From IMG/VR virus record IMGVR_UViG_3300042891_000711, positions 1 through 64,000 of that record: 64,000 nucleotides of DNA; one strand, 5' to 3'. Below are positions 4,794-43,326 of the stretch, one piece after another. Positions within the stretch are counted from its first letter, which is position 1, and every line of letters starts with the position of its first letter. The notes under the pieces are model-generated. The model was not told the DNA's origin and did no database searches. It saw only the letters and a program-made list of their open reading frames with translations. A program made the position numbers and the translations under genes.

Positions 4794-4852
4794 TGTAGAT
4801 GCCTAATTAGGGTCTACAACTACTACTTGCTTTTTATAAGGAGAAAACAATG
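4794..4852 (+). promoter_or_regulatory. ROSE-like RNA thermometer in the dnaK 5' UTR
   Basis: hairpin TGTAGATGCCT-AATT-AGGGTCTACA, then CTTGCTT-TTTAT-AAGGAG, pairing UUGCU with the SD around a bulged G. Confidence 0.7.
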
Positions 4853-11077: not shown

Positions 11078-11943
11078 TGAAAAAGTTATTAATTCTTTTA
11101 TTAGCAGTAACATTAGGCGGATGTGCCACGGGTAGTGTGATTCGTGAAAAAGTCACAGGTGAACAATTTGATAAACCTGAAGTAGTACGTGAAACATACT
11201 TTACTAAACCGGAGAATAGAGTATTGCCTCCAGCAGGCGGTCCTGTTCCTATAGCAGTGTATAGTTTCTTAGATAAAACAGGACAACGTAAGAATATACC
11301 TAACGTGGCTAGTTTTAGTACAGCAGTATCGCAGGGTGCAGAAGCATACTTAATCGGCGCCTTACAAGATGTAGGCGACCAACGTTGGTTTACTGTGTTA
11401 GAACGTGTAGGGTTAGACAACTTGATTAAAGAACGTCAGATGATTCGTCAGATGCGTGAACAATATCAAGGTAGAGAAGCCAAGTCATTACCACCAATGA
11501 TGTTTGCTGGTGTTATTGTTGAGGGAAGTGTAACAGGCTACGATAGTAACCTGCTTACAGGTGGTAGTGGTATGCGTATTTTGGGTATAGGAGCTCAAAC
11601 ACAATACCAAAGTGACACGGTTACAGTTACTCTAAGAACAGTAAGCGTTAATACAGGTGAAGTATTAACAACTGTAACAGTTACTAAAACAGTATTAAGC
11701 TACATGGATAAATTTGGTATATTAAAGTTTGTTGAAGAAGGCACAAAAGCCATTGAAGCTGAATCTGGTATGAGTATTAACGAAAGTGTCAATAAGGCAA
11801 CTAATCTAGCAGTCAAAGCAGCTGTGGTTGCTACTATTCGAGAAGGAGTTCGAAAAGGGCATTGGGCATTTAAGGAAGAGCCTAAGCCTGTAGTACAAAC
11901 AGATGGTATAACATATCCGCTGTTAGAAACAAAAAAACAATAA
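11077..11943 (+). CDS. csgG: curli secretion pore lipoprotein CsgG
   Basis: lipobox LGGC, AVYSFLDKTGQRK, FSTAVSQG, WFTVLERVGLDNLIKERQMIR. Confidence 0.93.
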   Translation: MKKLLILLLAVTLGGCATGSVIREKVTGEQFDKPEVVRETYFTKPENRVLPPAGGPVPIAVYSFLDKTGQRKNIPNVASFSTAVSQGAEAYLIGALQDVGDQRWFTVLERVGLDNLIKERQMIRQMREQYQGREAKSLPPMMFAGVIVEGSVTGYDSNLLTGGSGMRILGIGAQTQYQSDTVTVTLRTVSVNTGEVLTTVTVTKTVLSYMDKFGILKFVEEGTKAIEAESGMSINESVNKATNLAVKAAVVATIREGVRKGHWAFKEEPKPVVQTDGITYPLLETKKQ

Positions 11944-11967
11944 TAGGATTTTAAAAATCCAAGGAGC

Positions 11968-12759
11968 ATGACAATGAAATATAATTTAAAAGCAACGGTA
12001 AGTATGATGTTTTTAGCTTTGTCAACGTCGGTAATAGCCGCAGGTCCAACAGGCCCTAACCGTGTTTACATTGAACAATTGGGTAACACCAATAATGTTA
12101 CAATTGAACAGGTTGGCGGAACTAACGATGTTGGTGGTACTGCTGGTAGTGTAGCAGTTGACGCAACAGGTCTAAGTACACTAACAGTAACAGCACCAAG
12201 TACTAGTAACTATGCTACAATCAACGGTAGCAATAATGGTGTTACTATAACGCAAACTGGTGATGATAACCAAGCGCAGTATAATATTAAAGGTGGTACT
12301 AACACCTATACAAGTACTGTAACTGGTAGCGGCAATCAAAATAAACTTACTATTGGTAACACCAACACTAACGGTATGCGTAATACTGTTACTGAGTCAG
12401 TTACAGGTAGTACTAATATGTTGATTACTAATATTGTTGGCAGTGATAATGCGTTATCAACTACTATTGGCGGCGATAATAACCAATTAACCATTGGTGT
12501 AACTACTAGCAATGCCGATATTACTAACACTATTAGTGGTAGCAACAATATATTTAATATACAACAAATTGATGCTGCAGGCAGTGCTGGTCATAGTTTA
12601 ATTACATCAACTACAGGTGACTACAACAGTATTACCACACAGCAACAAGGTACAAATGATACTACATTGAACATTAGTACAACTGGTGATCATAATACGA
12701 TTACAGTACGTTCAAGCAGCGGTGCTATAGTAAGCCCAGTATCAGCAATAGTGAGATAG
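11968..12759 (+). CDS. secreted curlin-like beta-solenoid repeat protein
   Basis: signal peptide; repeated N-x-x-x-I-x-Q-x-G-x-x-N units. Confidence 0.75.
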   Translation: MTMKYNLKATVSMMFLALSTSVIAAGPTGPNRVYIEQLGNTNNVTIEQVGGTNDVGGTAGSVAVDATGLSTLTVTAPSTSNYATINGSNNGVTITQTGDDNQAQYNIKGGTNTYTSTVTGSGNQNKLTIGNTNTNGMRNTVTESVTGSTNMLITNIVGSDNALSTTIGGDNNQLTIGVTTSNADITNTISGSNNIFNIQQIDAAGSAGHSLITSTTGDYNSITTQQQGTNDTTLNISTTGDHNTITVRSSSGAIVSPVSAIVR

Positions 12760-12762
12760 TCA

Positions 12763-13854
12763 ATGAAACTATTGCTTGCCGTGGTATGCTTATTAGCATA
12801 TACCAACAGTTGGGCGGGCATTGGAACTGTAAGCGATACTAAAGGTACCGCTTGTTCAATAGAGCGTGCTAAACAGACCCTGCCTGGCAACAAAGGTGCC
12901 TCCATAGAAAGTATGGATACCTATGTTACAGGCGGCTGTGTTAGCAACATTACATTTAAAGATGACACCAAAGTAAAAATAACAGAAAACAGTCGACTAA
13001 TGATAGACGACTTTGTCTTCGATCCTAAAAAATCTGACGCAGGCAAACTAGCACTTAAAGTAGGCATGGGCACAGTGCGCTATGCCAGCGGTCAAATTGC
13101 TAAGAATAATCCACAACGAGTAGACATTAAAACTCCCACAGCCAGTATTGCTGTTCGTGGTACAGACTTTAACATGACTGTAGACGAAGCCGGTCAGAGT
13201 TTGGTAATTCTTGTGCCTAGTTGTAAAGACGGTGAAAAGATCAAAGAATATGAACTAGAAGAAAACTTATGTAAAGTGGGTAAGATTGAAGTTAGTACAC
13301 TGGCTGGTATAGTTACGTTAGATAAAGCATTTGAAGGTACCTATGTTACATCGGCTAACATGATGCCTAGTCCTCCAGCTATTATTAACACAATTGAAAG
13401 TAAGATTGGTAACAGTCTTATTATCACCCGCCCACCTGAAATTGTCAAGGCTAGTAAAGAAGCAGGTAAAAGCAAACGTGATCTAGAACAAGAAGAATTA
13501 GAAGCTATCCAAGCAAGTCAACTTGCTCAACGTATAGCCAAAGAAGGCGAAGCTAAAGCTACGGTAATGCCTTACAGTTTTGACAGTGGTAAATCAGGAT
13601 GTAATCCATCAATTAACGTCTGCGTCAAGTGGGAAAATCCTGATGGCGACAGTCTACAGGCCAAAGGTCGAGGAATAGCGTTTCGTCAAAGTGAAGATCA
13701 CTATGCGGAAGTTAAAACACAGGGCTACGAAAGTAATACGTCGATTGAAATAACACATGATGATAATATTGCTTCAGCTACAATTGGCTCAGGCGATCCA
13801 GGTGGTAATGTAGTACGTATCAAACAGAATTCTGGAGTGTTAAGACGACAATGA
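12763..13854 (+). CDS. FecR-domain periplasmic protein
   Basis: signal peptide; ITFKDDTKVKITENS, G.VRYASG, IKTPTASIAVRGTDF. Confidence 0.9.
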   Translation: MKLLLAVVCLLAYTNSWAGIGTVSDTKGTACSIERAKQTLPGNKGASIESMDTYVTGGCVSNITFKDDTKVKITENSRLMIDDFVFDPKKSDAGKLALKVGMGTVRYASGQIAKNNPQRVDIKTPTASIAVRGTDFNMTVDEAGQSLVILVPSCKDGEKIKEYELEENLCKVGKIEVSTLAGIVTLDKAFEGTYVTSANMMPSPPAIINTIESKIGNSLIITRPPEIVKASKEAGKSKRDLEQEELEAIQASQLAQRIAKEGEAKATVMPYSFDSGKSGCNPSINVCVKWENPDGDSLQAKGRGIAFRQSEDHYAEVKTQGYESNTSIEITHDDNIASATIGSGDPGGNVVRIKQNSGVLRRQ

Positions 13855-14987
13855 AACGACTCCTTTTAATCTTATTGTTAGTTTGTTCCGATACCCGGGC
13901 AGCAGGAATTACGGGTCTTAATTATCAAAATTATGCCGCAGGCGGTGCGCAACCCTCGTATACTCAAGATGCCAACGGTAACATCACCAATCGCACACTA
14001 TTAAGTACTGGAACTGTAAACACAGTAGGATTAACCACTAGTAGTGGGGCAGGCTTGCCTACTCGCAGTGATGGCTTTATTGTTCGTTTCTATGGTTACA
14101 TTAATATCGCAACAGCAGGCACCTACTACTTTGGCGGACAAGCCGACGACGGTATACGTATTAAAGTTGATGGTGTTTCTGTAGTCGACAGTTGGATTGA
14201 AAGTGGCGGAGCATTTAGACAAAGTAGTTCTATTACATTAGCCGCAGGTGTTGTTGCTGTGGAAGTGATGTTTTACGAGAACGGTGGCGGACAAATGGTT
14301 AACTTTCAGTGGTACACTCCGGGAGCAACAGCATGGGCTATGGTACCCACAGCGTCAACAGCCACCGATAATACCTATTGGGCGCCTGCAGCTCCTGCAC
14401 TATGCTGTGGGGGTAGTTCGTCAAGTTTTAATGCTAGTCCATCTAATGTAACAAAAGTACAGTCATACGCCACAAGGAATACCAATGACAGTCAAGTCTA
14501 CATAGACCAAATTGGTAATGACAATGAGATTACAGTTGATCAAACGGGTACTAAAAATAACTACACAGAATACAATGGTGGTGGTAGTTTCAATACCGTT
14601 AATATCTCACAAACTGGTAATAGTTCAACAACAGCAAACTATGTAGAACTAAATGTCAACGGTGATAGTAATACAGTAAATCTAACACAGCAGAGTACAG
14701 GCGGTGCTAAAGGTATCTACGCTACAGTTAACGATGACAATAATAATGTCACAGTCTTACAAAAAGACAGTGGTAATGCTTACTTAAACTTAAACTTGAG
14801 TGGTGGTAATAAGACAGTGGACATAACTCAACAGGGCAGTGCTAATCACATGGCCGACATTACATTAAGCGGTGCTGGTGCTAGAAGTTTAAACTTAAAT
14901 CAGCAAGGTGCAGTACAACAATTTTATAGTATCAATAGTAGTTGTGCTAGTAGTTGTCAAGCTATAACAGTAATACAGGGGCAATAA
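13851..14987 (+). CDS. secreted PA14 domain plus curlin-like repeat protein
   Basis: FYGYINIATAGTYYF...ADDGIRIKVDG...FYENGGG (PA14), then YIDQIGNDN-type repeats. Confidence 0.8.
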   Translation: MKRLLLILLLVCSDTRAAGITGLNYQNYAAGGAQPSYTQDANGNITNRTLLSTGTVNTVGLTTSSGAGLPTRSDGFIVRFYGYINIATAGTYYFGGQADDGIRIKVDGVSVVDSWIESGGAFRQSSSITLAAGVVAVEVMFYENGGGQMVNFQWYTPGATAWAMVPTASTATDNTYWAPAAPALCCGGSSSSFNASPSNVTKVQSYATRNTNDSQVYIDQIGNDNEITVDQTGTKNNYTEYNGGGSFNTVNISQTGNSSTTANYVELNVNGDSNTVNLTQQSTGGAKGIYATVNDDNNNVTVLQKDSGNAYLNLNLSGGNKTVDITQQGSANHMADITLSGAGARSLNLNQQGAVQQFYSINSSCASSCQAITVIQGQ

Positions 14988-15056
14988 CAGCACTTAACTT
15001 AGCAATTATTAAGTTTAAATATTAAAAACGACATTAAGATCGTAAGGAGCAAGTCT

Positions 15057-17105
15057 ATGAAGAAAATAACATTAGCATTGATGCTAGCGGGTGTATTTGG
15101 TTTGAATCAAGCAATGGCCGCAAATGCAATCATCGAAAATGAATACGTAAGAGCAGGTGTAAACGAAAGTACAGGTACACTAGGATCTGGTGGTGGCACA
15201 CGTCCGGGTCTACAGTATGACAATACAGGTACAAGTACTTGGCCCGGCAACAGTAGCCAAGGCGACTATCTAACACCGGGTAGCCCATTTGAAGGTTACA
15301 CAGTTAGATTAGAAGAAGCTGATGGTACACTAATCCGTTCATATACAAATAACAATACCGGTGGTGCACAAATTTCCGGCGGTGCTTGGGTAACTACTCC
15401 AACTGCTGACAGTGCTGTATGGGCTGCAACTACCAGTGACTTTGGTATTCAAAATACCTACAGCTTACCGGCTGGTCAAAAGTATATTGAAATTGACACA
15501 CAGATTACAGCAAGTATAGCTATACCTAAACTATGGTTTGGCCGCTTTATTGATCCTGATGCTATGCCTATGCCAGGTGATACGAGTGCTACAGACAATG
15601 CACGTGGCTACGGTGCAATTCCAACTACAAACGTAGTGTTTAGCGAAGCAACAGTAAGCCGTTACGCATTAGGTTTATACTCATCAGCAACTAACGTGGG
15701 TACAGGTATTAGCCCTATGTGGACAACTAATCCTAAGGACTACTACACAAACGTTGGCGGATACAATGTAGGTAACGGAGATCATACAATTGGTTTAGGT
15801 TTCTTAATGAGTGGCGTAAGTGCAGGTGACATTGTACACTTTAACTATGCTTATATCTTTGGACCAAGCGCATTTGGTGCGGCTACTTCGGCAGTTAGTG
15901 GTGGCGCTGGTGGTGGTACTCCTGGCACTGTTCCTGGAGGCGGCACGCTAGTTGACGTAGGTTCAGCAACAGATGCAGCGTCGGGTACACCAACACCTCC
16001 TCCTGCTCCAACAGTAACAGGCACAAGCACATCAACTATTACTATTAGCGATGTTACTGCGATAAGTGCAACATTACCAGTTATTACAGCGAGCCTAGCA
16101 CACCATGATGCTACAGAAGCCGCAGGTGTACAAACAATTGCACGTGAAACAACTACTAACGTAACAACTCCAATGGAACGTACATTAGTAACTAAAGTAC
16201 GTACAACCAGCACATGGAGTGATAGTACAACCACATTCGTTGATGCGGCTCCTGTGACTGATGTTACAGTATCGAACAGCGTAGCAACTTCAGTAGCTAA
16301 TGCTAGCTTCGGTGGTCGTGTTGATCAATACACACAATTAGCAGAACTAAACACAGGTATCAATCGTGGCTTAAACTCACAACTATTCCGTAAAGATATG
16401 GTTGATGGAAAGGGTTACAGAATGTACATGGGTGTTGCACATTTAGACAGCGGCGCAGGTAACGGCTATGATGCTAAGTCAGATAAATTTAACATTGGCG
16501 TTGAAAAAGATGTTAAAGCCTACTGGACGTTAGGTGCTCAATATACCAATGTTAATACATCATTAACAGGTGTTGACAGTGCCACTAAACAAAACAAAAA
16601 TCACTTGGGTGCTTATAGTATCTTAACTAAAAATAATTGGATCTTAAAAACAGATTTGGGTCTAGCTGATAACAGTCTTAAATCAAATCGCAACGTAGCG
16701 GGTTTATTCTACAATGCCAGCAGTACTGATGGAAACGATTGGTGGTTAAGTAACCGTGTTTATACTCCTAGCTTAAACGGCTTCCGCCCATACGCAGGTT
16801 ATACATATGGTAAAGATAAACGTGATGCTTACACTGAAACAGGTAGTATACAAAGTGCTAGAACTGTGGCCAGTGTAACTGACACCAATGACTACAGCGA
16901 AATTGGTGTGCGCTATGATAAGACCATTAATAAACTAATATTGTCGGGCGAAGCAGGTGTTTCTAGTGATAGCTACAAAGATATTAAAGGTGAAGTAAGT
17001 TATCTAGTTAATGCACGTAGCAGAATTAGCATAACAGCAAGTAGACAGGAACATAAGGACTTGTCAACTAACCAAATTGGTTTGCAAGGTAAGATAGATT
17101 TTTAA
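15057..17105 (+). CDS. outer-membrane autotransporter-like protein
   Basis: signal peptide, passenger-like domain, Pro/Thr linker, amphipathic beta-strand C-terminus ending in Phe (GKIDF). Confidence 0.7.
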   Translation: MKKITLALMLAGVFGLNQAMAANAIIENEYVRAGVNESTGTLGSGGGTRPGLQYDNTGTSTWPGNSSQGDYLTPGSPFEGYTVRLEEADGTLIRSYTNNNTGGAQISGGAWVTTPTADSAVWAATTSDFGIQNTYSLPAGQKYIEIDTQITASIAIPKLWFGRFIDPDAMPMPGDTSATDNARGYGAIPTTNVVFSEATVSRYALGLYSSATNVGTGISPMWTTNPKDYYTNVGGYNVGNGDHTIGLGFLMSGVSAGDIVHFNYAYIFGPSAFGAATSAVSGGAGGGTPGTVPGGGTLVDVGSATDAASGTPTPPPAPTVTGTSTSTITISDVTAISATLPVITASLAHHDATEAAGVQTIARETTTNVTTPMERTLVTKVRTTSTWSDSTTTFVDAAPVTDVTVSNSVATSVANASFGGRVDQYTQLAELNTGINRGLNSQLFRKDMVDGKGYRMYMGVAHLDSGAGNGYDAKSDKFNIGVEKDVKAYWTLGAQYTNVNTSLTGVDSATKQNKNHLGAYSILTKNNWILKTDLGLADNSLKSNRNVAGLFYNASSTDGNDWWLSNRVYTPSLNGFRPYAGYTYGKDKRDAYTETGSIQSARTVASVTDTNDYSEIGVRYDKTINKLILSGEAGVSSDSYKDIKGEVSYLVNARSRISITASRQEHKDLSTNQIGLQGKIDF

Positions 17106-17131
17106 TAAATTGCCCCGAAAGGGGCTTTTTA
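17100..17131 (+). repeat. 32-bp direct repeat copy 1 (contains stop codon and terminator)
   Basis: TTTTAATAAATTGCCCCGAAAGGGGCTTTTTA, identical to 19488-19519. Confidence 0.95.
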
Positions 17132-17149: not shown

Positions 17150-17248
17150 ATGTATACATGGCGCGAACGTATTATTTTCTTTGAAATTGTCCTTTTCTTC
17201 ACCCTTGTGTTTTCTATCCCCTACATAGAACAACTAATCCAACTGTAA
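17150..17248 (+). CDS. 32-aa hydrophobic peptide (not in ORF track)
   Basis: MYTWRERIIFFEIVLFFTLVFSIPYIEQLIQL; starts 5 nt after TATAAATA. Confidence 0.45.
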   Translation: MYTWRERIIFFEIVLFFTLVFSIPYIEQLIQL

Positions 17249-17282
17249 CAAAAATTTAATCTGTTTGTAACGCTACTGTAAT
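17243..17282 (+). promoter_or_regulatory. Pho-box array (PhoB-type direct repeats)
   Basis: CTGTAAC/ATTTAAT/TTGTAAC/CTGTAAT at 17243, 17254, 17265, 17276, an exact 11-bp period, upstream of phosphate-related genes. Confidence 0.75.
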
Positions 17283-17304
17283 CTTTGTGTGTTTAAATAT
17301 AATT

Positions 17305-18054
17305 ATGACCACAAGATATAAGACCATTTGTATATCCGACTTCCATCTTGGCACTAAAGATGCCAAGGCCGATCTATTAAACAATTTCCTTAAACATCAC
17401 ACCTGCGAAAATTTATTTCTTGTAGGTGACATAATCGACGGCTGGAAAATACAGCAGAACAAATGGCGTTGGCATCAAAGCCATACTAATGTAATACGTA
17501 GGATATTAGGCTATAGTAAACGAGGATGCAATGTAACCTATATAACTGGCAACCATGACGAATTCCTTCGTCCGTTAGTTAGTCATGGTTTTAATCTAGG
17601 TAATATTCGTATGGCCAATCAGGCAGAATACCGTAGTATCGATGGGGAACTATTTCTTATCACACACGGCGACTTGTTTGATGGTGTTACTAGACTAGCA
17701 CCGTGGTTAGGATTTTTAGGTGACAAGATGTATGATGTTGCTTTGTGGTTTAATAACTACTTTAACTTTGCCCGTAGAAAATTAGGGTTTGGTTATTGGA
17801 GTCTGAGTAAGTTTTTAAAAGCTCGTGTTAAAAAAGCAATGGGGTTTGTGTTTAAGTTTGAGCTTACTATGTTACAGTACGCACAAAAACGTGGATACGA
17901 TGGTGTTATCTGCGGACACATACACACACCCGAAATTAAACACATCAACGGCATGATTTATATGAATGACGGCGATTGGGTTGAAAGTTGTAGTGCCCTG
18001 GTAGAAGATTATGAAGGACGCTGGGATATTATATATTGGAATGAAATCAAATAG
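17305..18054 (+). CDS. metallophosphoesterase, PlcP/LpxH2-like (phosphate-starvation phospholipase C family)
   Basis: ISDFHLG, GDIIDGW, GNHDEFLR, HGD, CGHIH, NDGDWVES. Confidence 0.8.
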   Translation: MTTRYKTICISDFHLGTKDAKADLLNNFLKHHTCENLFLVGDIIDGWKIQQNKWRWHQSHTNVIRRILGYSKRGCNVTYITGNHDEFLRPLVSHGFNLGNIRMANQAEYRSIDGELFLITHGDLFDGVTRLAPWLGFLGDKMYDVALWFNNYFNFARRKLGFGYWSLSKFLKARVKKAMGFVFKFELTMLQYAQKRGYDGVICGHIHTPEIKHINGMIYMNDGDWVESCSALVEDYEGRWDIIYWNEIK

Positions 18055-18065
18055 GAGAAAGATGA

Positions 18066-19493
18066 ATGACGATACAACAGGTTAAATCAATAATGTATTA
18101 TGTAGTAATAGCATTTGCGCTATCAATGGCAGGGTTAAAGCAAGCGCATGCCGACAGCACCACTGACATTGTTAACGCACTAGTTATGAAAGGTGTACTT
18201 ACAGAAGAAGAAGGCGCATTATTAAATAAAGGACACAGTGGAGAAACAGGCGCTGCTAAAAAAGAAAAAGACACTACTGTTCATGCGGCTAGTAAAATGA
18301 GCATTCGTGGCTATTTACAAATGCGTAACACTACTATGCTCAGTGGTGATGAAGGAGTTAACCTTTGGTCAGATCGATCTGTAGGTGATAAAAACTCTCT
18401 TGCTGATCAAGACAAAAATTTCTTAATTCGTCGAGCACGTGTGATTATTTCTGGTTCTGCCGGTGACCGTTTAGATTACTACATTCAACCTGACTTTGCT
18501 AGTACAGCAGGTACTACAGGTAACGTAGCGCAATTACGCGATGCTTATGGTGATGTCAACTTGACCAAAGACAAAGTCCACCGCGTTCGTGTTGGACAAA
18601 GTAAAGTACCATATGGCTTTGAAAACTTACAGTCTTCACAAAATCGTCTAGCACTTGATCGTGCTGACGCATTTAATAGTGCGGTACGTGATGAACGTGA
18701 CTTGGGTGCGTTTTACTACTACACACCGGATAATGTGCAAAAACTCTTTAAAGAAATTCAAGATGGCGGACTAAAACACTCAGGCAACTACGGTATGTTT
18801 GGTTTAGGTATATATAACGGCCAAGGTGCTAACCAACAAGATCGTAACGACAACTACCATGTAGTGGCACGTGCTACTTACCCATGGAAAACTGAAAGCG
18901 GTCAAATTTACGAAGCTGGTGTACAGGGTTATACAGGCAAGTATGTAAGAACAGGCAGTGCTTATAGAAAAAATATGGGCAACAATGTCTACGCAACTAA
19001 AACACCAACATTAGAACCAGGCAATACAACTGGATTTAAAGATGAGCGTGTGGGTGTGAGTTTTATGATGTACCCTATGCCTTTCGGTTTGCAAGGTGAG
19101 TGGAACTGGGGTAAAACTCCTGGCTTAGATACTGCTGCTAGTACTGACGGCATTATTAAAGAAACTAATTTAAACGGTGGCTACATTCAAACTATGTATA
19201 AAATTGATAACTTCAAGGTGTTAGATACCAATGGTACATTAATTCCATTTGTTAGATGGCAATACTTTGATGGTGCGTCAAAAGCAGAAACTAACTCACC
19301 AATGAACAAAGTTAACGATTGGGAGTTGGGTGCTGAATGGCAAATTGCTCCAGAAGTTGAACTTGTGGCTTACTATCATATGATGAACCGTAGCAATTTA
19401 GTAACAGGCGCATCAGCTACTACACTAGTAAAACAAGACTATGCTAACTTTAAAGCAGATGCTTTACGGGTTCAGCTACAGTATAACTTTTAA
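18066..19493 (+). CDS. phosphate-selective porin OprO/OprP family
   Basis: signal peptide, LVMKGVLTEEE N-terminus, IRRAR, LRDAY, GQSKVPYGFENLQSS, C-terminal Phe. Confidence 0.85.
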   Translation: MTIQQVKSIMYYVVIAFALSMAGLKQAHADSTTDIVNALVMKGVLTEEEGALLNKGHSGETGAAKKEKDTTVHAASKMSIRGYLQMRNTTMLSGDEGVNLWSDRSVGDKNSLADQDKNFLIRRARVIISGSAGDRLDYYIQPDFASTAGTTGNVAQLRDAYGDVNLTKDKVHRVRVGQSKVPYGFENLQSSQNRLALDRADAFNSAVRDERDLGAFYYYTPDNVQKLFKEIQDGGLKHSGNYGMFGLGIYNGQGANQQDRNDNYHVVARATYPWKTESGQIYEAGVQGYTGKYVRTGSAYRKNMGNNVYATKTPTLEPGNTTGFKDERVGVSFMMYPMPFGLQGEWNWGKTPGLDTAASTDGIIKETNLNGGYIQTMYKIDNFKVLDTNGTLIPFVRWQYFDGASKAETNSPMNKVNDWELGAEWQIAPEVELVAYYHMMNRSNLVTGASATTLVKQDYANFKADALRVQLQYNF

Positions 19494-19519
19494 TAAATTG
19501 CCCCGAAAGGGGCTTTTTA
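19488..19519 (+). repeat. 32-bp direct repeat copy 2 (contains stop codon and terminator)
   Basis: identical to 17100-17131. Confidence 0.95.
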
Positions 19520-19567: not shown

Positions 19568-20359
19568 ATGAAACATATCGGAATTATAGGCTTTGGTTAT
19601 GTAGGCGGCGCAGTCGCAAGTAGCTATGCCAACGAACGAATATTAATCAACGACCCGTACAAATATCCAGATACTTCAATCAGTTATGAAACACTTATGA
19701 AAAAGTGTCGTGTGATATTTGTCTGCGTACCTACTCCGCAATCGGATGATGGCACCTGCAACACCAGCATATTGGAATCGGTATTACAAGGACTAGTGGG
19801 CTACGATGGTTTGGTAATTTGCAAATGTACAGCACCACCCAATGTATATACAAGACTTGAAACAGACCTAGCTCTTAAACTTGTGCATGTTCCAGAATTT
19901 TTAACACAGGCACGTGCAAAGTATGATTATGTTAATCCACATAAAATAGTAGTTGGCTGTAAGAAAAAGTTACGCGACGAAGTTGCTGAAGTATTAATGG
20001 CCAGTGCTATCAACTTTGACCGTGTTAATATTGAATACTGTGACATTGCCACTGCTAGTTTTTTTAAATATTTTGCTAACAATATGTTGGCCATTAAAGT
20101 TGTATTAAACAATGAGTTTAGTGTATTAGCCAGTGCCTTAGATGTAGAGTGGAATGAAGTTGCTCGTATTGCTGCAACTGACTCAAGACTAGGTAATACA
20201 CATTGGGCAGTGCCTGGTCCAGATGGACAAGCTGGATTTGGCGGAGCATGCTTTCCAAAAGACACTGCGGCATTTGCTACAATGGCAAAACCGTATAATA
20301 TACCGTTGTCTGTACTTGATGCAGCTATACAAGCAAACAAGTTAATGAGGGATGAATAA
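19568..20359 (+). CDS. UDP-glucose/GDP-mannose dehydrogenase family, short form lacking the C-terminal domain
   Basis: GIIGFGYVG, CVPTP, PEFL, GFGGACFPKD; own promoter TAGACA-17-TAAAAT. Confidence 0.85.
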   Translation: MKHIGIIGFGYVGGAVASSYANERILINDPYKYPDTSISYETLMKKCRVIFVCVPTPQSDDGTCNTSILESVLQGLVGYDGLVICKCTAPPNVYTRLETDLALKLVHVPEFLTQARAKYDYVNPHKIVVGCKKKLRDEVAEVLMASAINFDRVNIEYCDIATASFFKYFANNMLAIKVVLNNEFSVLASALDVEWNEVARIAATDSRLGNTHWAVPGPDGQAGFGGACFPKDTAAFATMAKPYNIPLSVLDAAIQANKLMRDE

Positions 20360-20561: not shown

Positions 20562-20633
20562 ATGTGGACTAAACCAGCAGCTACTGAAATGCGTTTCGGT
20601 TTTGAAGTAACTATGTATGTAATGAACAAGTAA
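20562..20633 (+). CDS. pqqA: PQQ precursor peptide PqqA (not in ORF track)
   Basis: MWTKPAATEMRFGFEVTMYVMNK with E-x-x-x-Y core; AGGAG SD; own terminator. Confidence 0.95.
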   Translation: MWTKPAATEMRFGFEVTMYVMNK

Positions 20634-20655: not shown

Positions 20656-20679
20656 ACAAAAGCCCTTCGGGGCTTTTGT
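20656..20679 (+). terminator. intrinsic terminator after pqqA
   Basis: ACAAAAGCCC-TTCG-GGGCTTTTGT. Confidence 0.85.
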
Positions 20680-20693
20680 CACGAATACGGGTT

Positions 20694-20783: not shown

Positions 20784-21350
20784 ATGAGTTTAATCGGAAA
20801 ACAAGTAGAAGAATTTAAAGCACAAGCATACCAACAGGGTAAGTTTGTAGAAGTATCAGAGCAAGACTTAAAAGGTAAATGGAGTGTGTTATTCTTTTAT
20901 CCAGCAGACTTTACATTTGTCTGCCCAACAGAATTAGCAGACCTACAAGACGTATACGCAAGTGACTTCAAAGGCTTAGGCGTTGAAGTATACAGTGTAA
21001 GCACAGACACACACTTTGTACACAAAGCATGGGCAGATGCTACAGACACAATCCGTAACATCACCTACACAATGATTGGTGATGCTAACCATCAGTTGGC
21101 TCGTCAATTTGGTGTGCTAATTGAAAGCGAAGGCTTAGCCGACCGCGGTACGTTTGTTATTGATCCAGATGGTGTAGTACAGATCATTGAGATCAATCCA
21201 GGTGGTGTAGGTCGCGATGCTAAAGAGTTGCTACGTAAAGTTAAAGCAGCAAAATACACACGTGAACATCCAGGTGAAGTATGCCCGGCTAAATGGCAAG
21301 AAGGAAGTGCTACACTAGCACCAAGTTTGGATTTAGTAGGTAAACTATAA
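20784..21350 (+). CDS. ahpC: alkyl hydroperoxide reductase C (2-Cys peroxiredoxin)
   Basis: [13 protein letters not shown] and GEVCPAKW. Confidence 0.97.
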
Positions 21351-21800: not shown

Positions 21801-23825
21801 ATGATGAAAAATAAACTTAAAAAACTCCTAGTCAGTCCGTGGACTGCATTAATTACATTAGCTGTTATTGTGGTAGTAATCCTACAAGGACCTACGTTTG
21901 TAGAGTCAGTTAGACTTAGATACTTTGACACCCTCATTGGCGGCAAGGCTCCTACAGAAAATAATATCTATACTGTAAACATAGATGAAGCTACATTAGA
22001 CAAGTATGGACAATGGCCATTCAAACGTGACAAGTATGCCAACCTAATTGATGACCTGTACAAACATGGCGCCGGCCTAGTTGTTTGGACTGTTATGATG
22101 CCAGAAGCAGATCGTCAAGGTGGCGATGCGGCCTTAGCATTAGAGTTAGAAGATCATCCAGTTATCTTAACTAACATGCCAAGTCAAACAACTAAAAACA
22201 TTCCACGTAAACCAGGCAGTGCTGTTATTGGTGATGAATACAGCGACACAATTATCACCTATCCAGGTATTATTGCTAACATTCCGGAACTAGAACGTAA
22301 TGCCGCAGGTGTTGGTATTGCTAATACGTTTCCAGAAGTGGATGGTGTTAATCGTCGACTACCATTGTTTGTTGGTTATGACAATAACGTATATCCAAGT
22401 ATTCCATTAGAAGTATTACGTGTTATATCACAGGACTCAACTTTCCAAGTTAAGTTAAATGAATTTGGTGTAGAGAAAATGCGCATACCAAGTTTCCGTC
22501 CTATTAGCACAGACAGTTTGGGTCGTATCTGGGTAGACTGGAGTCAAAAGTCGACACAGGTATCAGCAGTTAATTTACCTAAAGACTTTGGTGGTGCTGT
22601 GGTTATTGTAGGCCTAAGTGCCGCAGGTTTAGCTAATCCTGTGCCAACTAGTATCGGTAGTGTATGGCCACAAGACATGCAGGCCGCTGTTATTGGCACA
22701 CTTGCTAACAACGTAAACATTGAACGTCCATTCTGGGCAGACAACGCCGAACTGTTAGCTCTTATTGTTATCTCACTTATTATTTTAATCTTAAGCCGTT
22801 GGGTATATGTTGGCTTAGGAGTTGGTGTTGTATTGCTTGCGGCAATTACACCTGTAACAATGTATGCGTTTGCACACTATAACTTCTTGTTTGATGCTAT
22901 TGTGCCCACAGCAGGTGGTGTACTGGTTATGCTACACGCTTATGGTGTTAAATTCATCAGCGAGTTCTTACAGAAACAACAGATCAAGAAACAATTTGGT
23001 AGTTATGTCAACCCTACTATTGTTGAACGTTTACAAAAGAATCCAGAGCTGATTAAACTAGGCGGCGAACGTAAAGAACTTTCAATTGTTATGACTGACC
23101 TACGTGGCTTTACTACATTAGGTGAATCGTTTGGTGATGATGTAGAAGGACTTACACAGATCATGAACGACTACATGACCGCATTGAGTATTCCTGTGCT
23201 TAAGAATGATGGTACTTTAATTAAGTTTATTGGTGATGCTAGTTTACACGTACATGGTGCTCCATTAGACGATGTTGACCACGCTAAGACTGCGGTTAAG
23301 ACAGCACTTGAAATGATCAAAGCCATTGAAGACTTTAACGTAGAACTTACAGCTAGTGGTCGACCGCCGGTTGGTATGGGTGCAGGTGTTAACACAGGTG
23401 AAACCTTAATTGGTAATATTGGTGCTAAGAGCAAGTTTGGCTATGATGTCTTAGGTGACAGTGTAAGTACTGCGGCACGGTTAGAAGGACAGACTAAATC
23501 ATATGGTGTATTACTAATCATTGGTCCTAAGACTGCTGAATACTGTAAAGATGCGTTCCCTGTAGTATGGTTAGACAACATTGCTGTTAAAGGCAAAACA
23601 ATTGGTCTAGACATTTACACAGTTGGCCGTACTAATCTTTATATGCATGAAGAATATCGTAAAGAATATACTCGAGGTTCATGGAGTAAGGCTATTGTAT
23701 GGGCTAAAAAGTTAGTTAACAATGATGATGTTGACATTAAACATTACTATGAACTAATGATTGAACGCATGGAACAGGGTGTTCCTGCAAACTGGGACGG
23801 AACATATCATGCTACAAGTAAATAA
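21801..23825 (+). CDS. CHASE2-domain class III adenylate cyclase
   Basis: VNIDEATLDKYGQWPF and DGVNRRLPL (CHASE2); three TMs; TDLRGFT, KFIGDA, YDVLGDSVSTAARLEG. Confidence 0.93.
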   Translation: MMKNKLKKLLVSPWTALITLAVIVVVILQGPTFVESVRLRYFDTLIGGKAPTENNIYTVNIDEATLDKYGQWPFKRDKYANLIDDLYKHGAGLVVWTVMMPEADRQGGDAALALELEDHPVILTNMPSQTTKNIPRKPGSAVIGDEYSDTIITYPGIIANIPELERNAAGVGIANTFPEVDGVNRRLPLFVGYDNNVYPSIPLEVLRVISQDSTFQVKLNEFGVEKMRIPSFRPISTDSLGRIWVDWSQKSTQVSAVNLPKDFGGAVVIVGLSAAGLANPVPTSIGSVWPQDMQAAVIGTLANNVNIERPFWADNAELLALIVISLIILILSRWVYVGLGVGVVLLAAITPVTMYAFAHYNFLFDAIVPTAGGVLVMLHAYGVKFISEFLQKQQIKKQFGSYVNPTIVERLQKNPELIKLGGERKELSIVMTDLRGFTTLGESFGDDVEGLTQIMNDYMTALSIPVLKNDGTLIKFIGDASLHVHGAPLDDVDHAKTAVKTALEMIKAIEDFNVELTASGRPPVGMGAGVNTGETLIGNIGAKSKFGYDVLGDSVSTAARLEGQTKSYGVLLIIGPKTAEYCKDAFPVVWLDNIAVKGKTIGLDIYTVGRTNLYMHEEYRKEYTRGSWSKAIVWAKKLVNNDDVDIKHYYELMIERMEQGVPANWDGTYHATSK

Positions 23826-23828: not shown

Positions 23829-24986
23829 ATGAAAAATCAAATCAAATCAATTGGATTTGCATTAGACCCCGCAGGAACTCCATCTTTTCTATTAGACTGG
23901 GAACTTACTAAGAAATGTAATTTAGATTGTAGTTATTGTGATATTGGAATCGAAGGTGGTCATGATAATAGTATTCCACACCCGCCATTAGACGAATGTT
24001 TGTCTACAATTGATTTTTTGTATGAGTATGTGGATTTATACATGCAGAACAAAAAACCAACTCAGCGCAAAGTTATATTAAATGTCTACGGGGGCGAAAG
24101 TTTATTTCATCCTGACATTGTTAAAATTTTACAAGCGTGTCACGAAAAACACAATAACTATGCAGATCGATGGCATTTAACCATAACCACTACAACAAAT
24201 GCAGTAATTAATAAAAGCATATGGGCAAAAATTGTACCATTGATAGATGAATTTACGGTTAGTTATCATGCTGAAAATTTACCTAAACAAGAAAAATTGT
24301 TCTTTGATAATCTATTATTATTAAAGTCACATAATAAACGAGTTAAGTGTGTAGTAATGATGCACAATCAATTTGAGTTATGGGGCAAGTCTATTAATAC
24401 AATTGAATTTTGTAAAGACCATGACATCAAACACGTAGCAAAGCCGTTTGATAATGAAGATCTATCATACACCACTGAGCAATTTGATTATTTAAAAAGT
24501 TTTTGGATTAAAAATACACCATCTAAAAATGTTGATAGTTCGACAAAAAATTTAAAAACCATAGGCATTACAGAAAAAGTAGTGAGTATATGCGAAGGCC
24601 GTGCCTGTTGTGGTGGCCGCAAATTATCTTTAAATAATGATTTAAAATCTTCGGTCACTTTTATACCTAGGCAAGGATTTTACGGATGGAGTTGTAGCGT
24701 TAACTGGTTTTTTTTATTTGTTCAACAGGTAACTGGCAATGTTTATTTCAATAAAGATTGTCGTATGTCGTTGAATAATCGAGTTGAACCTATTGGTAAT
24801 TTATCTAATACTGCGGAAATATTAACTACATTGCAAACACAATTCGAGACTAAGTCGATGCCAGTAATACAATGTGCAAAACATCTATGTAAATGTGGGT
24901 ACTGTGCGCCTAAGGCTCATACTATCGAAGATTTTAAAGAATTAATTGCAAGGAATGTTGTGACTGATGTTATTAAATTTGAATAA
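23829..24986 (+). CDS. radical SAM protein
   Basis: CNLDCSYC, GGE, C-terminal Cys-rich auxiliary region. Confidence 0.9.
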   Translation: MKNQIKSIGFALDPAGTPSFLLDWELTKKCNLDCSYCDIGIEGGHDNSIPHPPLDECLSTIDFLYEYVDLYMQNKKPTQRKVILNVYGGESLFHPDIVKILQACHEKHNNYADRWHLTITTTTNAVINKSIWAKIVPLIDEFTVSYHAENLPKQEKLFFDNLLLLKSHNKRVKCVVMMHNQFELWGKSINTIEFCKDHDIKHVAKPFDNEDLSYTTEQFDYLKSFWIKNTPSKNVDSSTKNLKTIGITEKVVSICEGRACCGGRKLSLNNDLKSSVTFIPRQGFYGWSCSVNWFFLFVQQVTGNVYFNKDCRMSLNNRVEPIGNLSNTAEILTTLQTQFETKSMPVIQCAKHLCKCGYCAPKAHTIEDFKELIARNVVTDVIKFE

Positions 24987-28873: not shown

Positions 28874-28888
28874 TTGTATAATAATCTT

Positions 28889-42953: not shown

Positions 42954-42960
42954 AGAAATT

Positions 42961-43295: not shown

Positions 43296-43326
43296 AGAAA
43301 GCTCACTTCGGTGGGCTTTCTTTTTG
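43296..43326 (+). terminator. intrinsic terminator after tmRNA
   Basis: AGAAAGCTCAC-TTCG-GTGGGCTTTCT-TTTT. Confidence 0.85.

What the first reader, a model, noticed from the sequence alone, without database searches (positions are those of the whole stretch)
17243..19493. Pho-box-controlled PlcP-like phosphoesterase plus phosphate porin: possible phosphate mining from host lipids
Seen: four heptamers at an exact 11-bp period (CTGTAAC, ATTTAAT, TTGTAAC, CTGTAAT) before a metallophosphoesterase and an OprO/P porin. Known: PhoB binds CTGTCAT-like repeats with 11-bp period. PlcP (often annotated LpxH-like) is the Pho-regulated phospholipase C that frees phosphate from membrane lipids, and OprO/P import phosphate. 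Inference: under P limitation the phage imports phosphate and recycles host phospholipid phosphate for DNA synthesis, a different kit from the pstS/phoA/phoH of cyanophages.
Basis: partly seen in the sequence, partly recalled or inferred. Interest (0 to 1): 0.75.

Follow-up and report, generated by a model that had tools for sequence, protein, structure and literature searches.

The report
Phage phosphate-starvation cassette: PlcP plus porin
A giant lake phage carries a two-gene unit, a lipid-cleaving enzyme of the PlcP family and a phosphate-type outer-membrane pore, behind a promoter built like its host family's phosphate-starvation promoters, so it probably turns the infected cell's membrane lipids and outside phosphate into phosphorus for new phage.

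Summary
Four heptamers sit at an exact 11-bp period (17243-17282). They precede a 249-aa metallophosphoesterase (17305-18054) and a 475-aa Porin_O_P protein (18066-19493).

Match to the textbook Pho box alone is not beyond chance. Comparative evidence is strong:
- The YTGTAAY-N4-YTGTAAY repeat occurs once in the 219-kb phage record.
- Related phages conserve the heptamer cores, a TGnTTAAAT extended -10 and the spacing, while synonymous sites are saturated.
- The promoter always precedes the first gene of the unit, whichever gene that is. In close relatives the unit also holds pstS.
- Methylophilaceae, the likely host family, have canonical TGTCA Pho boxes with the same layout before their own porin, pstS and plcP.

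The enzyme groups with characterised PlcP (52% identity to the P. aeruginosa PA3219 orthologue). It does not group with LpxH (20%). About a third of related viral loci have an Agt-like glycosyltransferase right after it.

Best explanation: a host-PhoB-activated, terminator-bounded bicistron that frees phospholipid phosphorus and raises outer-membrane phosphate entry.

Not shown: PhoB binding, enzyme activity and pore selectivity. I found no description of phage PlcP in the searched literature. Phage oprP and host-PhoB control of phage genes have precedents.

The parts
17100..17131 (+). Left copy of a 32-bp perfect direct repeat. It holds the last codon (Phe), the stop and the intrinsic terminator (hairpin 17112-17125 plus T-run) of the upstream 682-aa outer-membrane-type gene. 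It marks the 5' boundary of the cassette.
   Evidence: Sequence. Terminator scan. The 25-mer and the hairpin occur only at 17107/17112 and 19495/19500 in the 219-kb record.
17243..17260 (+). Distal Pho-box-like pair: CTGTAAC aaaa ATTTAAT.
   Evidence: Conserved only in the nearest relatives (L010, L011, L013, L016, L019). More distant relatives have a terminator here instead.
17265..17282 (+). Proximal Pho-box-like pair: TTGTAAC gcta CTGTAAT. It sits where a -35 would be.
   Evidence: Unique in the record. The TGTAA and G.AA cores are invariant in 14 loci while the spacer varies (A2). No -35 hexamer was found.
17290..17298 (+). Extended -10 element, TGt TTAAAT. It lies 10 nt after the last heptamer and 6 nt before the ATG. 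This implies a leaderless or near-leaderless plcP mRNA (inferred).
   Evidence: Invariant T.TG.TTAAATA in A2. Same spacing in host-family Pho promoters. TGTTTAAATA occurs only twice in the record.
17305..18054 (+). plcP-like gene: a 249-aa metallophosphoesterase of the PlcP (lipid-remodelling phospholipase C) family. It has no signal peptide.
   Evidence: Pfam Metallophos. 52% and 42% identity to PlcP orthologues against 20% to LpxH. Tree. Metal-binding residues D12 H14 D42 N83 H84 H121 H205 H207 are invariant with characterised PlcPs (A4). LpxH-like fold with a helical insert. dN/dS 0.03-0.05.
18054..18059 (+). Shine-Dalgarno AGGAGA for the porin gene.
   Evidence: Read. It lies 6 nt before ATG 18066.
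18066..18152 (+). Signal peptide (29 aa, ...AHA|DST) of PstS origin, fused in frame to the mature porin.
   Evidence: Alignment A1. It is identical in type to the PstS signal peptide of L010 and L016. The porins of those loci have a different signal peptide of their own.
18066..19493 (+). Porin of the phosphate-selective O/P family: 475 aa, C-terminal ...QYNF.
   Evidence: PF07396 at 132.6 bits over profile positions 5-370 of 370. Foldseek top hits are OprP 2o4v and OprO 4rjx/4rjw. 75% identity to Methylophilaceae porins. dN/dS 0.04-0.08.
19488..19519 (+). Right copy of the 32-bp direct repeat: Phe codon, stop and terminator hairpin 19500-19513 plus T-run. It marks the 3' boundary of the bicistron.

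Best explanation
The region is a self-contained phosphate-stress cassette in a fragment of a jumbo myovirus-like phage from lake water. The phage most likely infects methylotrophs of the family Methylophilaceae.

Proposed mechanism, all steps inferred:
1. When the host is phosphate-starved, host PhoB~P binds two tandem Pho boxes (four TGTAA-core heptamers, 17243-17282). These replace the -35 element.
2. PhoB recruits RNA polymerase to an extended -10 (17290-17298). Transcription starts at or next to the A of ATG 17305.
3. The transcript carries plcP (leaderless) and the porin gene (with its own AGGAGA). It stops at the hairpin at 19500-19513.
4. PlcP is a cytoplasmic, membrane-facing, metal-dependent phosphoesterase with an LpxH-like lipid-binding lid. 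It cleaves host glycerophospholipids into diacylglycerol and a phospho-head group. The phosphate of that head group becomes available for nucleotide synthesis.
5. The pre-porin is exported with a signal peptide inherited from a deleted pstS gene and cleaved at AHA|D. It inserts in the outer membrane and raises phosphate entry to the periplasm, where the host Pst system takes over.

Shown here: gene identities by homology, operon boundaries, promoter conservation and geometry, strong purifying selection, and linkage with pstS and agt in relatives.

Inferred: PhoB as the activator, the start site, both biochemical activities, and the benefit to the phage.
For: Record type.
- It is a virus record, estimated 62% complete.
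- It has a T4-type DNA polymerase, a baseplate hub/tail lysozyme and tail-fibre-like genes.

Promoter.
- The repeat is unique in the record.
- No sigma-70 -35 is present.
- Heptamer cores and the extended -10 are invariant in 14 loci.
- Only 2-6 of 56 nt differ among the nearest relatives (read from alignment A2), although dS of the adjoining genes is 0.5-2.3.
- The same array precedes porin-first, pstS-first and plcP-first versions of the unit.

Geometry, all with the layout heptamer-4-heptamer-10 nt-(-10).
- Phage: TTGTAACgctaCTGTAAT + 10 + TTAAAT.
- Methylophilaceae porin: CTGTCATcaaaTTGTCAT + 10 + CAAAAT and CTGTCATcaaaCTGTCAT + 10 + CAAAAT.
- Methylophilaceae pstS: TTGTCATatacTTGTCAC + 10 + TAATAT.
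- Methylophilaceae plcP in 1.3-Mb genomes: four heptamers + 10 nt + TTTAAT + 7-8 nt + ATG.
- P. aeruginosa plcP: four heptamers at period 11. Its Pho box is published (PMC8528852).
- E. coli phoE: CTGTAATatatCTTTAAC + 10 + TAAAAA. This sequence shows TGTAA and TTTAA cores there.

Gene content.
- PstS (PF12849, 143 bits) sits in the same operon in L010, L011, L016 and L021.
- An Agt-like GT4 follows PlcP in about 30 of 89 loci and is 36-43% identical to P. aeruginosa Agt1.
- Pelagibacter phage Mosig has its PlcP homologue next to pstS.

PlcP identity.
Porin identity.

Host link.
- The porin is 75% identical to Methylophilaceae porins.
- The phage pqqA is 85-95% identical at nucleotide level to multiple copies in all five Methylophilaceae genomes tested.

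Precedent: host PhoBR controls cyanophage genes (PMC10976474).
Against: - Match to the canonical consensus is no better than the best random site in a genome of this size.
- Every conserved phage core is TGTAA. The host-family boxes seen here are TGTCA. PhoB affinity may therefore be low, or another factor may bind.
- Published work found in-silico Pho boxes in phage genomes unreliable against EMSA and expression data (PMC10976474).
- There are no start-site or expression-versus-phosphate data. The RNA-library material available was assembled contigs of relatives, which cannot show a 5' end or exclude DNA carry-over.
- This phage fragment lacks agt and pstS, so the fate of the diacylglycerol is open.
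- Only the closest porin matches and pqqA tie the phage to Methylophilaceae. Its permuted beta-type tmRNA was not found in five genomes of that family.
- The porin model is of moderate confidence (pLDDT 67). OprP and OprO are only marginally ahead of general porins.
Confidence: 0.7

Rival explanations
1. The promoter is activator-dependent, but the activator is not PhoB. Another OmpR-family response regulator of the host, or a phage-encoded factor on the missing 38% of the genome, recognises TGTAA direct repeats. The cassette would then answer a different signal, such as envelope or osmotic stress or the infection stage.
For: All conserved cores are TGTAA rather than the host-type TGTCA. OmpR-family regulators in general bind tandem direct repeats (textbook knowledge). 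The record is incomplete. Similar repeats precede other envelope genes in relatives: L022 before an OMP_b-brl gene, L028, and L016 before a small ORF.
Against: No Trans_reg_C regulator is encoded in the 219 kb held. The 11-bp period, the 10-nt distance to the -10 and the four-heptamer layout copy Pho promoters of the same genes in the host family. The genes under the promoter (pstS, O/P porin, plcP) are classic Pho-regulon members. The E. coli phoE sequence shows TGTAA and TTTAA cores in a porin promoter known as PhoB-dependent (the dependence is from my own knowledge of the literature).
Confidence: 0.15
2. PlcP is real, but its purpose is envelope remodelling rather than phosphorus supply. 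Examples are changing the surface to block superinfection or grazing, altering membrane properties for a long jumbo-phage infection, or preparing lysis. The porin would be one of many phage-encoded outer-membrane proteins.
For: The cassette lies in an island of envelope genes: CsgF, CsgG, curlin-repeat, PA14 and FecR-like proteins, a 682-aa outer-membrane-type protein, a D-Ala-D-Ala carboxypeptidase and a class-3 lipase. Lipid renovation changes phage attachment and predation in other systems (titles and abstracts of PMC9938194 and PMC9457565).
Against: This does not explain the Pho-type promoter, the pstS gene in the same operon in relatives, or the O/P-family identity of the porin. It is also not exclusive of phosphorus scavenging.
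Confidence: 0.1
3. The enzyme is a true LpxH (UDP-2,3-diacylglucosamine diphosphatase) that supports lipid A synthesis, as similar phage genes are annotated.
For: Database names of homologues, including those in phages Mosig and S-SRM01. The nearest solved folds are all LpxH.
Against: The LpxH equivalog models score 40 and 29 bits against cut-offs of 134 and 190. Identity to E. coli LpxH is 20% at 31.6 bits, against 52% at 248 bits to PlcP. No PDB sequence hit was found. LpxH sits on a branch of about 10 substitutions per site in the tree. Synteny with an Agt-like glycosyltransferase matches plcP-agt operons.
Confidence: 0.02
4. The heptamer array is a chance feature of AT-rich intergenic DNA, and the genes are read from a plain constitutive promoter.
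For: Random genomes reach the same consensus score.
Against: The array is unique in the record. The cores are invariant while the spacers and flanks vary across 14 loci. The array moves with the first gene of the unit. There is no -35 element.
Confidence: 0.03

Closest known systems
plcP-agt lipid-renovation operons of bacteria (S. meliloti SMc00171, Phaeobacter MED193, SAR11 HTCC7211, P. aeruginosa PA3219-PA3218)
   Same: The enzyme family is the same (42-52% identity, comparable to the 46-47% between characterised PlcPs). Pho boxes lie upstream, four heptamers in P. aeruginosa. A GT4 Agt-like gene follows directly in about a third of the related viral loci.
   Different: It is encoded by a phage. 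This record has no agt. It is paired with a porin instead. The heptamer cores are TGTAA. The viral proteins form their own clade, and the best bacterial matches found were 53% identical or less in 552 sampled genomes.
Pho-regulated auxiliary genes of cyanophages (pstS, phoA; host PhoBR control)
   Same: Phage genes for phosphorus acquisition placed under the host's phosphate two-component system (PMC10976474). Close relatives of this phage carry pstS in the same operon.
   Different: The gene content differs: a phospholipase C-type enzyme and an outer-membrane porin. The host group differs (betaproteobacterial-type methylotrophs in lakes). The Pho box is of the proteobacterial type (7+4+7, period 11) rather than the cyanobacterial PyTTAAPyPy(T/A) type.
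OprP/OprO of P. aeruginosa; PhoE of E. coli; phage-encoded oprP in freshwater amoC-phages
   Same: Pfam family Porin_O_P, with OprP and OprO as the best fold matches. Phosphate-starvation porins with Pho boxes; the phoE box has TGTAA and TTTAA cores. A 2026 preprint lists oprP as a host-like gene of lake jumbo phages (10.64898/2026.06.18.733297).
   Different: Only 14-16% identity to OprP and OprO in the structural alignment, and no sequence-level PDB hit. The signal peptide is borrowed from PstS. No amoC is present in this record.
LpxH (lipid A pathway)
   Same: A metallophosphoesterase core with a helical lipid-binding insert. The top 25 PDB fold matches are LpxH.
   Different: The sequence is far outside the LpxH equivalog. 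The genomic context and the promoter are those of the phosphate response.

Membership tests
PlcP (Pho-regulated intracellular phospholipase C, metallophosphoesterase type) | Sequence groups with experimentally characterised PlcPs rather than with LpxH | tested here: met
   52% identity at 248 bits to the PA3219 orthologue and 42% at 217 bits to the S. meliloti orthologue, against 20% at 31.6 bits to E. coli LpxH. In the ML tree, LpxH sits on a branch of about 10 substitutions per site outside all PlcP-like rows.
PlcP (Pho-regulated intracellular phospholipase C, metallophosphoesterase type) | Intact metallophosphoesterase metal-binding motifs (DxH, GD, GNH[DE], H, GH, H) | tested here: met
   D12 H14 D42 N83 H84 H121 H205 H207 are invariant in alignment A4, which includes both PlcP orthologues.
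PlcP (Pho-regulated intracellular phospholipase C, metallophosphoesterase type) | Genomic linkage to non-phosphorus-lipid synthesis (agt) and/or a Pho box upstream | tested here: met
   A Pho-box-like array is present here. A GT4 Agt-like gene follows directly in about 30 of 89 related loci. No agt is present in this record itself.
PlcP (Pho-regulated intracellular phospholipase C, metallophosphoesterase type) | Hydrolyses PE, PG or PC to diacylglycerol plus a phospho-head group | not testable with these tools
   Needs an enzyme assay or complementation of a plcP mutant.
LpxH (UDP-2,3-diacylglucosamine diphosphatase) | Scores above the curated equivalog cut-off | tested here: not met
   NF003743 scores 40.4 bits against 134. 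TIGR01854 scores 29.1 against 190.35.
Pho regulon promoter (PhoB-dependent, proteobacterial type) | Two or more 7-bp direct repeats at an 11-bp period, replacing the -35 and ending about 10 bp before the -10 | tested here: met
   The geometry is identical to host-family porin, pstS and plcP promoters and to E. coli phoE.
Pho regulon promoter (PhoB-dependent, proteobacterial type) | Heptamers match CTGTCAT better than chance | tested here: inconclusive
   19 of 28 matches is the best site in the record, but random genomes give 1.35 such sites. All cores carry A instead of C at position 5.
Pho regulon promoter (PhoB-dependent, proteobacterial type) | Binds PhoB~P and is induced by phosphate limitation in a phoB-dependent way | not testable with these tools
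   Needs EMSA or footprinting and reporter assays. The RNA data available were contigs only.
Phosphate-selective porin O/P (PF07396; OprP/OprO type) | Full-length match to the family profile, with a signal peptide and a C-terminal aromatic residue | tested here: met
   132.6 bits over profile positions 5-370 of 370. Signal peptide with AHA|D cleavage site. The protein ends ...QYNF.
Phosphate-selective porin O/P (PF07396; OprP/OprO type) | 16-stranded porin barrel closest to OprP/OprO | tested here: inconclusive
   OprP and OprO rank 1-3 (E about 1e-11, TM 0.52-0.60). OmpF-type porins follow closely, and the model pLDDT is 67.
Phosphate-selective porin O/P (PF07396; OprP/OprO type) | Arginine ladder and lysine cluster giving phosphate or anion selectivity | not tested
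   The residue-level mapping was not attempted, because identity to OprP is 14% and the model confidence is moderate. It needs electrophysiology or a better model.

The most novel reading that the evidence does not exclude
A large, so far undescribed group of lake phages, mostly jumbo-sized, carries a modular phosphorus kit wired to the host PhoB. At least 456 IMG/VR contigs encode a PlcP 65-97% identical to this one. The kit combines PlcP with or without Agt, a UDP-sugar-dehydrogenase-like gene, PstS and an O/P porin. Infection would then impose phospholipid-to-glycolipid renovation and extra phosphate uptake on hosts. Most sampled hosts lack plcP (121 of 151 Methylophilaceae genomes had no hit). 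That would make viral lipid renovation a real term in lake phosphorus budgets. The systematic TGTAA (not TGTCA) cores would be a viral tuning of PhoB affinity, so the kit fires only under severe starvation.
Probability: 0.45. Interest if true: 0.8.

Novelty: new variant of a known kind. Interest (0 to 1): 0.68.

Why it matters
Phage genes that answer the host's phosphate alarm are known mainly from marine cyanophages (pstS, phoA). Here the same regulatory trick appears in a lake jumbo phage that likely infects methylotrophs, and the cargo differs in kind.

- One gene encodes an enzyme that mines the cell's own membrane phospholipids. That pool is of the same order as the host chromosome's phosphorus in a small cell (my own rough estimate, not computed).
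- The other gene encodes an outer-membrane pore.

The enzyme family is routinely mislabelled LpxH in phage genomes. Viral lipid renovation has therefore probably been overlooked, although hundreds of viral contigs carry the gene and a third of those examined also carry the partner glycosyltransferase.

The cassette offers clean, testable parts: a 60-bp promoter, a 249-aa enzyme and a porin. It also shows how such kits evolve. The unit is flanked by 32-bp direct repeats, its gene order is shuffled among relatives, and pstS was lost by an in-frame deletion that left its signal peptide on the porin.

Tried and rejected
- The search for related loci in genome contigs with the single protein returned only one locus. 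It was a 2.6-kb low-GC contig binned in a Competibacteraceae MAG (L009). Its sequence carries the phage-type TGTAAT repeat and it groups with the viral clade. I treated it as probably phage DNA, not as a bacterial reference.
- Taxon names are hidden for genomes reached through loci. Host inference therefore could not use the genome search labels. It rests on names attached to porin homologues and on pqqA similarity.
- The tmRNA was tried as a host marker. The Rfam beta_tmRNA model found nothing above cut-off in five Methylophilaceae genomes, so it gives no support.
- PDB sequence searches were empty for both proteins. Only fold searches were informative.
I rebuilt the alignment without those rows and did not resend them.
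- Pfam Gp23 and Terminase_6N searches of the record found no capsid or terminase. The only Terminase_6N hit was the PhoH P-loop. Phage identity rests and the PHROG hits.
- The region upstream of phoH shows no heptamer array.
- Reads laid from RNA libraries were contigs of relatives and gave no start site.
- I did not find any paper describing a phage-encoded PlcP. The library covers open-access papers only.
- One unpublished genome (G040) is counted in the tally of 111 of 401. No other claim uses it.
Full report
**What is there**

The window is the first 64 kb of a single 218,902-bp contig. The tools class it as an IMG/VR virus record, linear, with an estimated completeness of 62%. It encodes a T4-type DNA polymerase, a baseplate hub/tail lysozyme and several tail-fibre-like proteins. 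It is therefore a fragment of a jumbo, myovirus-like phage. Twenty lake-water metagenomes hold the stretch studied here.

- CTGTAAC at 17243
- ATTTAAT at 17254
- TTGTAAC at 17265
- CTGTAAT at 17276

Their starts are 11 bp apart. They lie in a 199-bp gap. The gap begins after the terminator of a 682-aa outer-membrane-type gene (hairpin 17112-17125) and ends at ATG 17305.

The first ORF (17305-18054, 249 aa) is a calcineurin-type metallophosphoesterase. The second (18066-19493, 475 aa) matches Pfam Porin_O_P over the whole profile. It has its own AGGAGA ribosome-binding site. A second copy of the same terminator follows (hairpin 19500-19513).

The 32-bp string that holds the last Phe codon, the stop and the terminator is identical at 17100-17131 and 19488-19519. 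It occurs nowhere else in the record. The two genes thus form a terminator-bounded bicistron flanked by direct repeats.

**Is the heptamer array more than chance?**

By similarity to the textbook box alone, it is not. The literature consensus is CTGTCAT-N4-CTGTCAT (quoted in PMC8528852). Scored against four copies of CTGTCAT at period 11, the site has 19 of 28 matches. That is the best site on either strand of the record. However, first-order Markov genomes of the same size give 1.35 such sites on average.

Four other observations carry the case.

1. Uniqueness. The self-similar repeat YTGTAAY-N4-YTGTAAY occurs once in 219 kb on both strands. My own composition arithmetic expects about 0.08.
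2. Position. The gap has no sigma-70 -35/-10 pair. The last heptamer ends exactly 10 nt before TGtTTAAAT, an extended -10.
3. Conservation. In 14 loci from independent metagenomes, with PlcP proteins 73-97% identical, these features are invariant (alignment A2):
   - the TGTAA core of heptamer 3;
   - the G.AA core of heptamer 4;
   - the T.TG.TTAAATA block.

   The 4-nt spacers and all flanks vary. Among the nearest relatives, 2-6 of the 56 nt from 17243 to 17298 differ (read from A2). Synonymous divergence of the adjoining genes is 0.5-2.3 substitutions per site.
4. The array travels with the operon, not with a gene. It precedes:
   - plcP in the window, L010 and L011;
   - the porin in L013-L015 and L019-L020, where the order is porin, small peptide, plcP;
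   - pstS in L016 and L021, where the order is pstS, porin, peptide, plcP.

**The enzyme is PlcP-like, not LpxH**

Sequence comparisons:

| Comparator | Identity | Score |
|---|---|---|
| P. aeruginosa protein followed by a GT4 gene and an adenylate cyclase gene (the PA3219-PA3218-cyaB arrangement, recognised from my own knowledge of that locus) | 52% | 248 bits |
| S. meliloti PlcP orthologue | 42% | 217 bits |
| E. coli LpxH | 20% | 31.6 bits |

- Characterised PlcPs are themselves 46-47% identical to each other (PMC8528852).
- The NCBIfam LpxH equivalog models score 40 and 29 bits against cut-offs of 134 and 190.
- No PDB chain matches by sequence.
- In a maximum-likelihood tree of 91 proteins, LpxH sits on a branch of about 10 substitutions per site. 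All other rows form one group. That group includes both PlcP orthologues, 22 proteins from unnamed bacterial genomes, the phage Mosig protein and 63 viral-contig proteins. The viral-contig proteins form a single clade with support 89/68.
- The metal-binding residues are invariant.
- The AlphaFold model (pLDDT 80) has a phosphoesterase core plus a helical insert. Its 25 best PDB matches are all LpxH structures at 18-21% identity. The architecture is that of a lipid-handling phosphoesterase, but the family is a different one.

**Context in relatives**

At least 456 IMG/VR contigs encode a relative of this protein, and the 80 kept are 64-97% identical to it. By contrast, the best bacterial matches were 53% identical or less. 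Those came from 401 sampled genomes of one class and 151 of the family Methylophilaceae. The class-level tally of 111 of 401 includes one unpublished genome, G040.

In about 30 of 89 loci examined, a GT4 glycosyltransferase follows directly. It is 36-43% identical to P. aeruginosa Agt1. This is the plcP-agt pairing that defines bacterial lipid renovation (PMC4796936).

Locus L027 shows the order porin, plcP, GT4, UDP-sugar-dehydrogenase-like gene, ahpC. The window has the same last two genes downstream (19568-20359 and 20784-21350) but no GT4 anywhere in the record.

The cultured Pelagibacter phage Mosig has its homologue, annotated as an LpxH-type hydrolase, divergently next to a pstS-like gene.

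**The porin and a trace of pstS**

- The closest named cellular homologues of the porin are from Methylophilaceae, at 75% identity. Methylotenera and Methylophilus follow at 66-70%.
- The model (pLDDT 67) is a porin barrel. Its three best PDB matches are OprP and OprO, only slightly ahead of OmpF-type porins.
- In L010 and L016 a PstS-family gene (PF12849, 143 bits) lies directly before the porin.
- The window's porin starts with the PstS signal peptide (MTIQQVKSIMYYVVIAFALSMAGLKQAHA). It is joined exactly at the cleavage site to the mature porin (DSTTDIVN...). The porins of L010 and L016 have a different signal peptide of their own (alignment A1).

The window's lineage therefore lost pstS by an in-frame deletion that left a working export signal. 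Both genes are under strong purifying selection among phage relatives, with dN/dS of 0.03-0.08.

**Host family and its Pho promoters**

Besides the porin, the phage carries a 23-codon pqqA at 20562-20633 (PF08042, 42 bits). It is 85-95% identical at nucleotide level to two to eight copies in each of five Methylophilaceae genomes tested. The G+C content of 38% also fits small-genome members of that family; that last point is my own knowledge.

In those genomes the promoters of the orthologous genes have canonical boxes with the same layout as the phage promoter:

| Promoter | First box | Second box | Gap | -10 | Gap to ATG |
|---|---|---|---|---|---|
| Phage (window) | CTGTAAC aaaa ATTTAAT | TTGTAAC gcta CTGTAAT | 10 nt | TTAAAT | 6 nt |
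| Host-family porin (L119) | none | CTGTCAT caaa TTGTCAT | 10 nt | CAAAAT | not leaderless |
| Host-family porin (L121) | none | CTGTCAT caaa CTGTCAT | 10 nt | CAAAAT | not leaderless |
| Host-family pstS (L119) | none | TTGTCAT atac TTGTCAC | 10 nt | TAATAT | not leaderless |
| Host-family plcP (L132-L136, 1.3-Mb genomes) | ATGTCAT attt GTGACAC | TTGTCAC gaaa CTTTCAC | 10 nt | TTTAAT | 7-8 nt |

In the phage and in the host-family plcP promoters the two boxes are joined by a further 4-nt spacer, so all four heptamers keep the 11-bp period.

The phage promoter thus has the layout of the host family's own plcP promoter, including the near-leaderless start. P. aeruginosa plcP also has four heptamers at period 11.

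The one systematic difference is A instead of C at heptamer position 5. The E. coli phoE upstream sequence reads CTGTAAT atat CTTTAAC + 10 nt + TAAAAA. That this is the phoE Pho box is from my knowledge of the literature. It shows that such cores occur in a PhoB-dependent porin promoter.

**How it most likely works**

All steps below are inferred.
1. In a phosphate-starved host, PhoB~P occupies the two tandem boxes. It substitutes for the missing -35 and activates transcription from the extended -10.
2. The mRNA begins at or next to ATG 17305, carries plcP and the porin gene, and ends at the second terminator.
3. PlcP has no signal peptide. It acts at the inner face of the membrane and converts phospholipids to diacylglycerol plus a phospho-head group. 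Host phosphatases can then release phosphate for nucleotide synthesis.
4. The porin is exported, cleaved at AHA|D and inserted in the outer membrane. It raises phosphate flux towards the host Pst transporter.

A phage with a genome of roughly 350 kb has a large phosphorus demand per particle, which gives a plausible selective reason. That genome size is 219 kb divided by 0.62, my own arithmetic.

Relatives that also carry agt and pstS would replace the lost phospholipid with glycolipid and add a high-affinity binding protein. This phage would have to rely on the host for both. Two Methylophilaceae genomes that carry the closest porins have no PlcP detectable with this query. Only 30 of 151 sampled genomes of the family have one. 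For many hosts the phage would therefore bring a new capability.

**What argues against, and what remains open**

- No experiment links PhoB to this DNA.
- A published study found that predicted Pho boxes in a cyanophage genome agreed poorly with binding and expression data (PMC10976474).
- The invariant TGTAA cores could mean weaker PhoB binding or a different OmpR-family regulator. No such regulator is encoded in the 219 kb held, but 38% of the genome is missing.
- The RNA-library data available were assembled contigs of related phages. They cover both genes, and one contig bridges the plcP-porin junction (17829-18118). They cannot show a 5' end or exclude DNA carry-over.
- The host assignment is not supported by the phage's permuted beta-type tmRNA, which was not found in five Methylophilaceae genomes.
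- Phosphate selectivity of the porin and phospholipase C activity of the enzyme are inferred from family membership only.

**Novelty**

- Host-PhoB control of phage phosphorus genes is established in cyanophages (PMC10976474).
- A 2026 preprint lists oprP among host-like genes of lake jumbo phages (10.64898/2026.06.18.733297).
- Four full-text searches found no description of a phage-encoded PlcP or of a viral plcP-agt module. In phage records the gene is annotated as an LpxH-type hydrolase.

I therefore rate this as a new variant of a known kind. The regulatory logic is familiar. The cargo is new and apparently widespread, and the evolutionary traces are unusually legible.

Noticed in passing
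window 20562-20633 (+): A 23-codon pqqA gene ([23 protein letters not shown]; PF08042, 42 bits against a cut-off of 21) with its own AGGAGA and a terminator at about 20662-20680. It is 85-95% identical at nucleotide level to 2-8 copies in each of five Methylophilaceae genomes. It is the most deeply covered stretch in four lake RNA libraries (word depth 120-260), probably because host copies map there. It is a phage-borne precursor of the methanol-dehydrogenase cofactor PQQ.
   Followed up: partly
window 10580-17105 (+): A curli-type secretion set in a phage: CsgF (10580-11077), CsgG (11077-11943), curlin-repeat proteins (11968-12759, and 13851-14987 with a PA14 domain), a FecR-domain protein (12763-13854) and a 682-aa protein ending in Phe. 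A homologue of the last one in L005 is called an autotransporter. Together with the porin, this makes an island of outer-membrane and surface proteins.
   Followed up: partly
window 42915-43321 (+): A phage-encoded two-piece (permuted) tmRNA. It matches Rfam tmRNA_permuted (111 bits) and beta_tmRNA (98 bits), with a tag ending ...ALAA. The beta_tmRNA model found nothing above cut-off in five Methylophilaceae genomes, so its origin does not match the host family suggested by other genes.
   Followed up: partly
window 17100-17131 and 19488-19519: Perfect 32-bp direct repeats (Phe codon, stop, terminator) flank the plcP-porin cassette and occur nowhere else in the 219-kb record. With the shuffled gene order in relatives, this suggests the unit is moved or rearranged by recombination between terminator repeats.
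   Followed up: partly
window 4850-6766, 45365-47002, 20784-21350, 21801-23825, 24967-25767, 26644-27423 (-), 28874-29914, 51075-52421: Many host-like genes sit in the first 64 kb: DnaK (68% identical to gammaproteobacterial DnaK), GroEL, AhpC (TIGR03137, 320 bits), a CHASE2-adenylate/guanylate cyclase, a D-Ala-D-Ala carboxypeptidase, a class-3 lipase, UvdE and an ATP-dependent DNA ligase. The class-3 lipase could act on diacylglycerol made by PlcP. That is speculation and was not examined.
   Followed up: no
L005 2770-2858; L012-L016 and L019-L021 just upstream of the PlcP gene: In several relatives a small hydrophobic ORF of about 29 codons (MFE[LI]FI[DE]A...) lies between the promoter or the porin and plcP, overlapping its start. 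It is absent from the window.
   Followed up: no
L016 2120-2145; L022 6756; L028 4667; L085 6904: Further TGTAAT-type direct repeats precede other genes near the cassette in relatives: a 53-codon ORF, an OMP_b-brl gene, and sites after the GT4 gene. This hints at a small regulon. One of them (L016) has a 12-bp rather than 11-bp period.
   Followed up: no
G000:C1:75683-76294 (-), outside the window: A phoH gene (PF02562, 139 bits) is present in the same phage record. Its upstream region shows no heptamer array.
   Followed up: yes
L117 (Pelagibacter phage Mosig) 2897-4732: The cultured pelagimyophage Mosig has a PlcP-family gene (48% identical, annotated as a UDP-2,3-diacylglucosamine hydrolase) divergently adjacent to a pstS-like gene. 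Synechococcus phage S-SRM01 has a more distant homologue (32%). Both look like mis-annotated PlcP genes.
   Followed up: partly
window 19568-20359 (+): A short (263-aa) UDP-glucose/GDP-mannose-dehydrogenase-like protein lacks the C-terminal domain. It is 92% identical to the gene that follows the Agt-like GT4 in L027. A full-length UDP-glucose dehydrogenase lies at 32300-33544. Either could relate to UDP-glucuronate supply for glycolipids, but this record has no GT4.
   Followed up: no
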